A stretch of DNA of 63,248 nt, the filler included, from Octopus bimaculoides (taxonomy: Eukaryota), in NCBI RefSeq assembly GCF_001194135.2. It is 5 parts of 5 records of this genome, joined end to end, with 100 filler letters (N's around TTAATTAATTAA, not from the genome) between each part and the next. Parts side by side here need not be neighbours in the genome. Positions count along the whole stretch, not along the records: positions 26,769 to 47,085 come from NC_069007.1; 4 more parts are not named here. One strand, given 5' to 3'. Within the stretch, counting starts at the first letter, position 1; every line of letters starts with the position of its first letter. The translations under genes and the position numbers were made by a program. Positions 36,882 to 37,429 of this stretch are shown here, piece after piece. The notes beneath the pieces are model-generated. The model made no database searches. It had not been told where the DNA came from and was given only the letters and a program-made list of their open reading frames with translations.

Positions 36882-36974
36882 CTTTCCTTTGGTAAGTAAT
36901 GAACCAAGACCCCAAAAGGTGGCGCCACCAGTGGCTGTTCCTCCGACCCATTCGTATTTATTCTCTGATTCAAC
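36882..36974 (-). CDS. PANK4: PANK4 coding exon 5 (93 nt): [31 protein letters not shown]
   Basis: Acceptor tcttttttatccctag, donor AAG|GTAATG; homologous to human [31 protein letters not shown]; phase 0 to 0. Confidence 0.96.
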
Positions 36975-37245
36975 CTAGGGATAAAAAAGAAAAGAGAAAT
37001 TACAAGAAATAACACAATTAAAACAAGGTATTACAAAATCTGAAACAGTATTTATAGGCACGAGAGGAAGAGTAGCACTGAGGGAGGTTGCTTTGTACCT
37101 GTTGAGATGTTAGAGTATAAAAGAGGGATAGAAATAGGTGTTTTGCTATAGAAGAGATATTTGGCAACTCTCTTATATGTAGTGTGGTGGAAAGCAGAAG
37201 TGTTGTAGTGTGATATCAACGAAAAAAAAAAAATCTGAAACTGAC

Positions 37246-37429
37246 CTTGGTAATAATTACACCGGAGCCAATGTTGACCAGCAAGAAAGGATAAAGGACC
37301 GAGTCGACTCCTTGGAACTTACACTCAGGATCTTGGTTTCTTTGGAAAATAAAGGCCTCATCTGGAATGTTCTTCAACAGGAAATTACAGCCCTTAATTA
37401 GGCAATTCACTTCATTTTCCATTGAAAGT
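37246..37429 (-). CDS. PANK4: PANK4 coding exon 4 (184 nt): [26 protein letters not shown]...[16 protein letters not shown]
   Basis: Acceptor tgttacag, donor AAG|GTCAGT; strong match to CLIKGCNF and LLVNIGSGV; phase 2 to 0. Confidence 0.96.

What the first reader, a model, noticed from the sequence alone, without database searches (positions are those of the whole stretch)
36882..37429. PANK4 has Trp at the catalytic Arg site: possible convergent pseudokinase outside amniotes
Seen: exon 5 reads KYEWVGG (TGG at 36948-36950), while exon 4 keeps Glu in ENEVNC (GAA at 37411-37413). Established: active PanKs need Glu138 and Arg207 (human PANK3 numbering); amniote PANK4 is a pseudokinase through E138V plus R207W, and non-amniote orthologs are generally described as keeping both residues. 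Inference: this invertebrate independently gained the same R-to-W change, one CpG deamination from CGG. A-to-I editing cannot turn UGG back into Arg.
Basis: partly seen in the sequence, partly recalled or inferred. Interest (0 to 1): 0.8.

Follow-up and report, generated by a model that had tools for sequence, protein, structure and literature searches.

The report
Invertebrate PANK4 with amniote-like Arg-to-Trp change
An intact PANK4 gene from a mollusc-like invertebrate (probably an octopus) has independently acquired the same Arg207-to-Trp change that helps make PANK4 a dead kinase in mammals, birds and reptiles, and has also lost a second vitamin-B5-binding residue, so its kinase half is probably crippled; this is a modest but real case of parallel evolution.

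Summary
On the minus strand, TGG at 36950-36948 encodes Trp in KYEWVGG, and GAA at 37413-37411 encodes Glu in ENEVNC. HMMER alignment to human PANK3 places them at Arg207 and Glu138.

The gene is an intact PANK4 orthologue: 13 GT-AG exons, 614 codons, Fumble plus the start of DUF89, cut by the piece edge.

In a taxon-labelled panel, all 11 amniotes have Val138. All 10 covered at site 207 have Trp. Four frogs, sharks, a bichir, teleosts, seven arthropods, two bivalves, a crinoid, cnidarians, a flatworm and plants keep Glu and Arg. Among 149 cluster representatives, Arg207 is kept in 143 and Trp occurs only in mouse.

The closest relative found (L001, sister at 96% bootstrap) keeps Arg, encoded by CGG. 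So the change is independent and one CpG transition away.

New here: the window also has S195I (unique in both panels), D137N, G216A and Y258T. Its kinase domain, but not its linker/DUF89 part, is unusually diverged.

Loss of kinase activity is a prediction, not a result. PANK3 R207W and S195V are reported as feedback-resistant rather than dead, and Glu138 is kept here. The species (octopus?) and how far Trp extends within the lineage could not be tested.

The parts
40957..41140 (-). PANK4 exon 1. ATG at 41140-41138; ends in AIDIG, the first half of the DIGGS phosphate-1 motif.
   Evidence: The ORF list, the guide tblastn and the exon model with a GT donor.
40333..40412 (-). PANK4 exon 2 (GSLAKIAYCSLV...).
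   Evidence: AG/GT splice sites; the phase joins exon 1 to give DIGGSLAK.
37787..37998 (-). PANK4 exon 3, containing ATGGGS (TGGG motif, codons 37842-37831).
37246..37429 (-). PANK4 exon 4. Asn164 (AAT 37416-37414) stands at PANK3 Asp137. Glu165 (GAA 37413-37411) stands at Glu138 and is kept. Ile217 (ATT 37257-37255) stands at Ser195.
   Evidence: Ser195 is kept in 146 of 149 representatives, and no other sequence in either panel has Ile.
36882..36974 (-). PANK4 exon 5. Trp229 (TGG 36950-36948) stands at PANK3 Arg207. Ala238 (GCC 36923-36921) stands at Gly216.
   Evidence: It is the only exon-5-like sequence in the piece.
35376..35538 (-). PANK4 exon 6, encoding the flap KDIYGLNTTALNLPAELLASSFGK. 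Tyr276 stands at Tyr254 and is kept. Thr280 (ACT 35454-35452) stands at Tyr258.
   Evidence: An alternative weaker donor inside this exon is possible but was not favoured.
34255..34445 (-). PANK4 exon 7 (NDIGQ...IYFGGGFIRSNP, adenosine motif FGG).
32908..32989 (-). PANK4 exon 8, the end of the Fumble domain ([16 protein letters not shown]).
   Evidence: The Pfam Fumble match spans residues 57-390.
31961..32052 (-). PANK4 exon 9, the linker (DDENYVWGENLANNSGL...). The donor GTACAT is the only phase-compatible one that keeps the conserved YVWGENLANNSGL segment.
   Evidence: This is the least certain boundary in the model.
29542..29697 (-). PANK4 exon 10, linker and start of the phosphatase half (…SSYRPDTVDLTED…).
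28338..28450 (-). PANK4 exon 11.
27585..27672 (-). PANK4 exon 12.
26863..27067 (-). PANK4 exon 13, in the N-terminal part of the DUF89/ARMT1-like domain (…LAGNMFDWGAKE…). The gene continues past the piece edge at 26769.
   Evidence: (PF01937, 1.6e-12, profile positions 5-130 of 311).

Best explanation
The piece holds the first 13 exons of an intact PANK4 orthologue: a type II pantothenate-kinase (Fumble) domain fused to a DUF89 phosphatase. It comes from a mollusc-like invertebrate, probably an octopod. In this lineage the pantothenate/acetyl-CoA pocket of the kinase domain has decayed. Arg207 became Trp and Ser195 became Ile; these are two of the three side chains that hydrogen-bond pantothenate in PANK3. 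Asp137 became Asn and its partner Tyr258 became Thr, and Gly216 became Ala. The catalytic base Glu138 and the nucleotide-binding glycine motifs are kept. Each of the four changes with a clear homologous codon is one nucleotide step from the state in the nearest relative found. The Arg-to-Trp step is a C-to-T transition at a CpG (CGG to TGG). The most likely reading is that constraint on kinase function relaxed in this lineage. Animals carry a separate active PanK of the PANK1-3/fumble type, though that gene was not looked for here. Ordinary mutation then hit the pocket, arriving in parallel at the residue that amniote PANK4 carries. Shown: the codons, the gene structure, the distribution of residues across taxa, the sister relationship with an Arg-bearing relative, and the faster evolution of the kinase domain. 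Inferred: the domain binds pantothenate and acetyl-CoA poorly and contributes little or no kinase activity, and the protein works mainly through its phosphatase half as a brake on CoA synthesis, as in mammals and flies. Confidence is about 0.9 that the Arg-to-Trp change is real and independent of amniotes. It is about 0.6 that the domain is functionally a pseudokinase.
For: Codons and alignment to PANK3. The gene is intact: 13 exons, all AG/GT, 614 codons with no stop and no N in any exon. Domains: Fumble 7e-116 and ARMT1-like/DUF89 1.6e-12. Representative panel: of 149 representatives, Arg207 is kept in 143 with Trp only in mouse, Ser195 in 146 and Glu138 in 148. Labelled panel: all 11 amniotes carry Val138, and all 10 covered at site 207 carry Trp. 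Four frogs, chondrichthyans, a bichir, teleosts, seven arthropods, Mytilus, Sinanodonta, a crinoid, a coral, a jellyfish, a flatworm, an ichthyosporean and plants keep Glu and Arg. Four genomic relatives, L001-L004, keep D, E, S, R and G. Tree: window+L001 96%, L002-L004 with bivalves 92%, vertebrates 100%, amniotes 99%. Codons in L001 are GAT, AGT, CGG and GGC against the window's AAT, ATT, TGG and GCC. Acceleration in the window lineage is shown three ways. Tajima counts are 43:16, 44:20, 38:13 and 46:21 with mollusc outgroups, p = 0.0006-0.004. The window has 9 deviations at 104 columns that are at least 90% conserved, against 1-4 in L001-L004, human and Xenopus. Its kinase-domain identity to other phyla is about 10 points lower than theirs to each other, while its linker/DUF89 part is as conserved as theirs. 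Literature: Glu138, Ser195 and Arg207 hydrogen-bond pantothenate and Asp137 pairs with Tyr258' (PMC8366970). Pantothenate hydrogen-bonds Arg207 and E138A is inactive (PMC6199309). E138V+R207W are held to inactivate PANK4 (PMC8861153; PMC11022721), in amniotes according to PMC9352595. PANK4 suppresses CoA synthesis through its phosphatase, and the fly orthologue CG5828 acts as a phosphatase (PMC13276073).
Against: Glu138, the catalytic base, is retained. So are the DIGGS, TGGG, GSG and FGG motifs, so ATP binding and chemistry are not obviously abolished. A preprint from PanK specialists states that PANK3 R207W and S195V diminish acetyl-CoA feedback and that their expression still produces CoA-dependent drug resistance. 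That means these changes, taken singly, do not kill PANK3. D137N and G216A also occur in a dragonfly, and D137N in a spider, both with Arg207 kept, so those two changes are weak evidence. The relative-rate excess is not significant with distant outgroups (p = 0.15-0.26). Ladona and Mytilus annotations show as many deviations at conserved columns as the window. Only one genome sequence was available, with no reads, no RNA and no close congener. No activity was measured. The primary paper (Yao et al. 2019, PMC6511746) could not be read.
Confidence: 0.6

Rival explanations
1. The kinase domain is still an active pantothenate kinase. By losing Ser195 and Arg207 while keeping Glu138 it has become insensitive to acetyl-CoA feedback: a weak but unregulated kinase fused to a phosphatase, not a pseudokinase.
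For: Glu138 and all nucleotide-binding motifs are kept. The two replaced positions are exactly those whose mutation in PANK3 (S195V, R207W) is said to diminish acetyl-CoA inhibition while still driving CoA-dependent phenotypes. The related G193A mutant keeps about 2% specific activity yet raises CoA. Ile at 195 is chemically close to the engineered Val.
Against: The two mutations were studied singly in PANK3, and here they are combined with D137N, Y258T and G216A. Arg207 and Ser195 also bind the substrate itself, so the double loss should hit pantothenate binding hard. The kinase domain as a whole evolves faster than its neighbours, which fits relaxed constraint better than a retuned enzyme. 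A kinase fused to a phosphatase acting downstream on the same pathway, with no feedback control, would run a futile cycle.
Confidence: 0.2
2. The Trp codon is an assembly or sequencing error, or a rare allele of the sequenced individual, and the species normally has Arg.
For: Only one assembly was available. It is a draft with seven N runs in 20 kb. No reads or transcripts could be consulted. No protein of this species or of a congener was returned by any search.
Against: The exon has no N and lies more than 2.5 kb from any gap. The same protein carries four further substitutions at highly conserved pocket sites spread over three exons. A single base error cannot explain that pattern, which is coherent with real divergence. 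The splice sites and the frame are intact.
Confidence: 0.05
3. Trp207 is not convergent but ancestral or widespread in bilaterian or lophotrochozoan PANK4.
For: The sampling of lophotrochozoans is thin: two labelled bivalves, one flatworm and four unlabelled genomic relatives. No labelled cephalopod or gastropod was obtained.
Against: Every sampled non-amniote orthologue except the window has Arg, apart from a few His/Cys/Thr/Phe oddities in short or duplicated copies. The sister sequence L001 and the bivalve clade have Arg. Parsimony therefore puts the change on the window's own branch.
Confidence: 0.03
4. This locus is a redundant, decaying PANK4 duplicate, and an intact Arg-bearing copy exists elsewhere in the genome.
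For: The other non-amniote losses of Arg207 that I saw are in atypical proteins that look like extra copies. These are mudskipper proteins of 366-367 aa with no DUF89 hit on record, a jellyfish PANK4-like protein of 382-424 aa and a plant paralogue. Only 20 kb of this genome is visible.
Against: The locus has the full conserved exon structure, canonical splice sites, an open frame over 614 codons and a well-conserved linker/DUF89 part. That is not the picture of a decaying copy. No second copy could be looked for.
Confidence: 0.07

Closest known systems
Amniote PANK4 (human Q9NVE7 type), the 'pseudo-pantothenate kinase' fused to a DUF89 4'-phosphopantetheine phosphatase
   Same: Same orthologous gene and two-domain layout. 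It has the same Arg207-to-Trp replacement, in an almost identical local context (window KYEWVGG, human RFEWVGG). The expected outcome is also the same: a kinase half that no longer binds pantothenate well, with a phosphatase half that carries the function.
   Different: Amniotes also have Glu138Val, whereas the window keeps Glu138. The window has Ser195Ile, Asp137Asn, Gly216Ala and Tyr258Thr, which amniotes lack (mammals have Tyr258His). The amniote kinase domain remains slowly evolving: Ovis is 87.5% identical to Xenopus and 68% to a bivalve. The window's is about 10 points more diverged than expected. The two events are phylogenetically independent.
Non-amniote PANK4 with intact catalytic residues (frogs, fishes, arthropods, bivalves, cnidarians; plant PANK2-type fusion)
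   Same: Orthology, exon structure (shared exon 4/5/6 boundaries with L001-L004), retention of Glu138 and the nucleotide-binding motifs.
   Different: Those proteins keep Ser195, Arg207 and Gly216. The window does not.
Engineered or selected human PANK3 pocket mutants R207W, S195V and G193A
   Same: Same two positions. The residue is identical at 207 and near-identical in chemistry at 195 (Ile against Val).
   Different: Those are single substitutions in an active, feedback-regulated PANK1-3-type enzyme. They are reported as feedback-resistant with reduced activity. The window combines both in a PANK4 background with further pocket changes, and nothing has been measured.
Drosophila dPANK4 (CG5828)
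   Same: An invertebrate PANK4 orthologue that works as a phosphatase and brake on CoA synthesis without relying on kinase activity.
   Different: The fly's catalytic Asp residues are numbered 209 and 245, which suggests a short protein without the kinase domain (my inference). The window keeps a full-length, foldable-looking kinase domain.

Membership tests
PANK4 (type II PanK - DUF89 fusion; '4'-phosphopantetheine phosphatase') | N-terminal type II pantothenate kinase (Fumble, PF03630) domain | tested here: met
   Pfam Fumble E = 7e-116, residues 57-390, profile positions 2-333 of 334. PDB hits to Cab1 and PANK1-3 have E-values from 4.9e-58 to 2.1e-45.
PANK4 (type II PanK - DUF89 fusion; '4'-phosphopantetheine phosphatase') | C-terminal DUF89/ARMT1-like phosphatase domain on the same transcript | tested here: met
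   Exons 10-13 on the same strand, in frame, match PF01937 at 1.6e-12 over profile positions 5-130 of 311. The rest of the domain lies beyond the piece edge.
PANK4 (type II PanK - DUF89 fusion; '4'-phosphopantetheine phosphatase') | Closer to PANK4 orthologues than to PANK1-3/fumble paralogues | tested here: met
   The top labelled hits are almost all named PANK4 or 4'-phosphopantetheine phosphatase, at 51-59% identity. The human PANK1-3 chains score far lower (171 bits or less, against about 415 bits).
PANK4 (type II PanK - DUF89 fusion; '4'-phosphopantetheine phosphatase') | Conserved metal-binding Asp residues of the DUF89 active site | not testable with these tools
   Those residues lie downstream of exon 13, outside the piece (26769 is the edge).
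Pseudo-pantothenate kinase as defined for amniote PANK4 | Arg207 replaced by Trp | tested here: met
   TGG at 36950-36948 aligns to PANK3 Arg207.
Pseudo-pantothenate kinase as defined for amniote PANK4 | Glu138 replaced by Val | tested here: not met
   GAA (Glu) at 37413-37411. The window is therefore not filed as a member of the amniote type, only as working like it.
Pseudo-pantothenate kinase as defined for amniote PANK4 | No pantothenate kinase activity | not testable with these tools
   This needs an enzyme assay or a complementation test.
Catalytically competent type II PanK | Catalytic base Glu138 and nucleotide-binding motifs (DIGGS/T, TGGG, GSG, FGG) | tested here: met
   All are present.
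Catalytically competent type II PanK | Pantothenate-binding side chains Ser195 and Arg207 | tested here: not met
   Ile217 and Trp229 stand at these sites. They are Ser in 146 and Arg in 143 of 149 representatives.
Catalytically competent type II PanK | Asp137-Tyr258' pair that stabilises the active site across the dimer | tested here: not met
   Asn164 and Thr280 stand at these sites. The alignment of the flap is gap-free against PANK3, but this loop varies among taxa, so the Tyr258 call is less secure.

The most novel reading that the evidence does not exclude
The kinase half is not dead but rewired. With Glu138 and the ATP site intact, and with the polar pantothenate/acetyl-CoA contacts (Ser195, Arg207, Asp137, Tyr258) swapped for Ile, Trp, Asn and Thr, it could be a feedback-blind kinase. 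It could also be a kinase or sensor for a different, more hydrophobic ligand, sitting next to the phosphatase. That would be a lineage-specific change in how CoA synthesis is controlled, and the repeated appearance of Trp at this site in amniotes and here would reflect selection for a pocket-filling residue rather than mutational bias alone.
Probability: 0.12. Interest if true: 0.6.

Novelty: new member of a known kind. Interest (0 to 1): 0.4.

Why it matters
PANK4 is the textbook case of a metabolic pseudokinase, and its loss of activity has been treated as an amniote event. A second, independent lineage with the same Arg207Trp change, reached by a partly different route (Ser195Ile instead of Glu138Val), offers a natural replicate. 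It would let one ask three things: whether PANK4's conserved job is the phosphatase brake on CoA synthesis, whether the kinase fold is kept for a non-catalytic role, and whether Trp at this site is favoured or is simply the commonest CpG mutation of a CGG codon. The other non-amniote replacements seen (His and Cys in mudskippers) would also be CpG-transition products if the ancestral codons were CGC or CGT; those codons were not seen, so this is inference. If so, it points to mutation bias under relaxed constraint. The practical consequence is small. Annotation pipelines and comparative studies should not assume that non-amniote PANK4 is an active kinase.

Tried and rejected
1. Reading the primary paper (Yao et al. 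2019, PMC6511746) and Subramanian et al. 2016 (PMC5064008): neither is held. What is known comes from papers that cite them.

2. Finding the window's own species or a congener failed. Three homologue searches and the representative search returned nothing above about 63% identity. No cephalopod-labelled protein appeared, so the codon could not be checked in a second assembly, in reads or in RNA.

3. Identifying the unlabelled relatives from their ENA analysis accessions (ERZ21867824, ERZ25069870, ERZ26273219, ERZ25069866) by full-text search gave no paper. L002-L004 were placed with bivalves by tree only. L001 remains unnamed.

4. Species assignment by repeat content. The piece holds seven or more copies of a tRNA-like SINE ending in a TA/TG microsatellite. 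I recognise it from memory as the abundant octopus SINE. None occurs in L001-L004. This is a lead, not a test.

5. A first bootstrap run with Biopython's BLOSUM distance timed out. It was replaced by a Kimura-distance neighbour-joining tree.

6. An alternative, Arg-encoding copy of exon 5 in the flanking introns: none found.

7. dN/dS was not attempted, because the nearest relative is only 62.5% identical in protein, so synonymous sites are saturated.

8. Structure prediction was not run. The tool returns no coordinates, so it could not show pocket geometry.

9. I had recalled that frog PANK4 carries one of the two inactivating changes. The four frog sequences obtained all have both Glu138 and Arg207, so that recollection was dropped.
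Full report
**The observation**

Read on the minus strand, positions 37429-37246 form an exon encoding (E)[61 protein letters not shown]. Positions 36974-36882 form the next exon, encoding [31 protein letters not shown]. Both have AG acceptors and GT donors.

phmmer against the PDB aligns the spliced protein to human PANK3 without gaps through this region. Window Glu165 falls on the Glu of LDELDC and window Trp229 on the Arg of NYKRVTG. The spacings in the human sequence (Glu138 to Ser195 is 57 residues, Ser195 to Arg207 is 12) tie these columns to the published residue numbers.

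**What the gene is**

A guide tblastn and manual splice-site reading give a 13-exon minus-strand model. The exons are 41140-40957, 40412-40333, 37998-37787, 37429-37246, 36974-36882, 35538-35376, 34445-34255, 32989-32908, 32052-31961, 29697-29542, 28450-28338, 27672-27585 and 27067-26863.
- All 13 exons have AG/GT boundaries.
- The model has 614 codons with no stop and no N in any exon.
- The gene runs off the piece at 26769.

Residues 57-390 match Pfam Fumble at 7e-116. Exons 10-13 match the first 130 of 311 positions of the ARMT1-like/DUF89 domain. The best labelled homologues are almost all named PANK4 or 4'-phosphopantetheine phosphatase. The least certain boundaries are the exon 9 donor and a possible alternative donor in exon 6. 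Neither touches the sites of interest.

**How unusual Trp207 is**

I aligned the 149 best representatives returned from a search of 1.84 billion 50%-identity cluster representatives.

| Site | Residue kept | Others |
|---|---|---|
| Arg207 | 143 of 149 | Trp only in the mouse representative; single cases of His, Thr, Phe |
| Ser195 | 146 of 149 | Gly, Thr |
| Glu138 | 148 of 149 | Val (mouse) |

A second, taxon-labelled alignment of 89 sequences gives a clean picture (with names).
- **Amniotes.** All 11 have Val138: human, mouse, dog, sheep, dolphin, bat, mouse lemur, pangolin, cobra and two turtles. All 10 covered at site 207 have Trp.
- **Other vertebrates.** Four frogs (Xenopus laevis, Engystomops, Rhinophrynus, Mantella), two sharks, a ray, a chimaera, a bichir and many teleosts have Glu138 and Arg207.
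- **Invertebrates and beyond.** A dragonfly, a bee, a stick insect, a bedbug, a tick, a spider, a springtail, Mytilus, a crinoid, a coral, a jellyfish, a flatworm, an ichthyosporean and plants also have both. A second bivalve, Sinanodonta, also keeps all of them.

The window is the only non-amniote sequence with Trp.

**Independence from amniotes**

The nearest relative I could find is an unlabelled 48-kb ENA contig (L001). It carries the same exon structure. It shares derived motifs with the window that the other relatives lack: [16 protein letters not shown] and IYFGGGFIRSNP. It keeps Asp137, Glu138, Ser195, Arg207 and Gly216. Three more genomic relatives (L002-L004) keep them too.

In a neighbour-joining tree of 323 columns, support values are as follows.

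| Clade | Bootstrap |
|---|---|
| Window + L001 | 96% |
| L002-L004 with the labelled bivalves | 92% |
| Vertebrates | 100% |
| Amniotes | 99% |

Window+L001 joins the bivalves only weakly (49%). Parsimony therefore puts Arg-to-Trp on the window's own branch and, separately, on the amniote stem.

L001 encodes the Arg as CGG. The other relatives use AGG or CGT.

The same protein has lost more of the pocket.

| PANK3 site | Window residue | Window codon | L001 codon |
|---|---|---|---|
| Asp137 | Asn164 | AAT | GAT |
| Ser195 | Ile217 | ATT | AGT |
| Arg207 | Trp229 | TGG | CGG |
| Gly216 | Ala238 | GCC | GGC |
| Tyr258 | Thr280 | ACT | flap aligns differently |

The first four are each one nucleotide step from the codon in L001.

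In PANK3, Glu138, Ser195 and Arg207 hydrogen-bond pantothenate, and Asp137 pairs with Tyr258 of the other protomer (PMC8366970). Arg207 also binds pantothenate-site ligands (PMC6199309; PMC8693618). So two of the three substrate-binding side chains and both members of a stabilising pair are gone. The catalytic base and the DIGGS, TGGG, GSG and FGG motifs are kept.

S195I is unique in both panels. D137N and G216A also occur in a dragonfly, and D137N in a spider, both with Arg207 kept, so they weigh little.

**Signs of relaxed constraint**

- **Deviations at conserved columns.** At the roughly 104 columns that are at least 90% conserved among the other sequences, the window deviates at 9. L001 deviates at 4 and L002-L004, human and Xenopus at 1-2 each.
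- **Relative rate.** Tajima counts for window against L001 are 43:16, 44:20, 38:13 and 46:21 with mollusc outgroups (p = 0.0006-0.004). The trend is the same but not significant with distant outgroups.
- **Domain comparison.** Between phyla, the kinase domain is normally 15-20 points more conserved than the linker/DUF89 N-terminal part (for example bee-bivalve 70.1/48.4, frog-bivalve 68.9/50.4). For the window against the bivalve it is 58.8/55.6. Its phosphatase-side sequence is as conserved as anyone's, but its kinase domain is about 10 points more diverged.
- **Contrast with amniotes.** The amniote kinase domain does not show this extra divergence: sheep is 68% identical to the bivalve.

**Mechanism**

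The best-supported reading is decay of the pantothenate/acetyl-CoA pocket under relaxed constraint. That leaves a kinase-like domain that contributes little or no pantothenate kinase activity, while the protein acts through its phosphatase half. This fits two literature results. PANK4 suppresses CoA synthesis through its phosphatase (PMC9352595). The fly orthologue CG5828 acts as a phosphatase with catalytic Asp residues numbered 209 and 245 (PMC13276073).

Arrival at Trp need not be adaptive. From CGG the CpG-transition products are Trp and Gln. The His and Cys seen at this site in two mudskipper proteins would be the CpG-transition products of CGC or CGT. I did not see those codons, so this is inference.

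**The main rival**

[quoted passage not shown] It also reports that expressing them gives CoA-dependent drug resistance, and that the neighbouring G193A mutant keeps about 2% specific activity yet raises CoA (10.1101/2022.08.12.503669).

Arg207Trp alone is therefore not a death sentence for the enzyme, and the window keeps Glu138. A weak, feedback-blind kinase remains possible at about 0.2. I rate it below the pseudokinase reading for two reasons: the two changes are combined here with three more, and the whole domain is accelerated.

Sequencing error or a rare allele (0.05), an ancestral Trp (0.03) and a decaying duplicate (0.07) are less likely. The reasons are given under rivals.

**The organism**

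No tool could name it. The tree places it beside bivalves with an unnamed sister. The piece has about 36% G+C, many TG/TA microsatellites and seven N runs. It holds at least seven copies of a tRNA-like SINE, which I recognise from memory as the abundant octopus SINE and which is absent from L001-L004. 'Probably an octopod' is a lead, not a result. The claim that matters here, that the sequence is not an amniote and not a vertebrate, is tested and met.

**Novelty and score**

No searchable paper links PANK4 with cephalopods, and the literature treats the inactivation as an amniote event. This is a new, independent member of a known kind (PANK4 with a disabled kinase pocket), reached by a partly different set of substitutions. 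It is a sound and tidy case of parallel evolution. It also offers a useful natural replicate for asking what the PANK4 kinase fold is kept for. It does not overturn anything, and its functional half is untested. Interest 0.4.

Noticed in passing
L004:10227-13686 (ena:ERZ25069866:ctg5081_21x_l), not in the window: In a bivalve-like relative, the intron between PANK4 exons 4 and 5 holds about 30 head-to-tail copies of a 115-bp unit. The unit is the 3' two-thirds of exon 4 itself; each copy translates to [37 protein letters not shown]. It is an exon-derived satellite inside its own gene.
   Followed up: no
Proteins P0109 (Periophthalmus magnuspinnatus) and P0307 (Boleophthalmus pectinirostris): Two mudskipper PANK4-like proteins of 366-367 aa, with no DUF89 hit on record, have Arg207 replaced by His and Cys respectively. 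Both also have Gly216Arg and Ser214Thr, and many deviations at conserved columns (12-14 of about 105). This looks like another independent non-amniote decay of the same pocket, probably in an extra copy.
   Followed up: partly
Proteins P0159 (Rhopilema esculentum, jellyfish) and P0177 (Eleusine coracana, finger millet): There are further sporadic losses of Arg207. A jellyfish PANK4-like protein has Thr. A plant PanK paralogue has Phe together with Asp137Tyr. Loss of Arg207 outside amniotes is therefore not unique to the window, although Trp is.
   Followed up: partly
window 27170-27380, 28527-28723, 30124-30327, 32632-32719 (reverse), 33246-33363, 37599-37696, 42445-42578: At least seven copies (80-93% identical) of a tRNA-like SINE of about 200 bp, ending in a TA/TG microsatellite, lie in the PANK4 introns and upstream region. 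From memory this is the abundant octopus SINE. None occurs in L001-L004.
   Followed up: partly
window 37416-37414 (AAT, Asn164) and 37257-37255 (ATT, Ile217): If the source is a cephalopod with heavy A-to-I recoding, editing the first A of AAU would give GAU (Asp) and restore Asp137 at the RNA level. Editing AUU would give GUU (Val), not Ser. UGG cannot be edited. This is pure codon logic, with no RNA data.
   Followed up: no
window 35947-36192 (+) and 42708-43241 (-): Two open frames of 81 and 177 aa lie in intron 5 (antisense to PANK4) and upstream of exon 1. The first resembles, from memory, the C-terminal tail of invertebrate retroelement proteins. Pfam gave no significant match for either.
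   Followed up: partly
window 33841-34209 (+ strand frame), intron 7: A histidine- and threonine-rich 122-aa open frame lies in a G+C-skewed low-complexity stretch (GC skew -0.32 in 33769-34768). It is most likely a simple repeat, not a gene.
   Followed up: no
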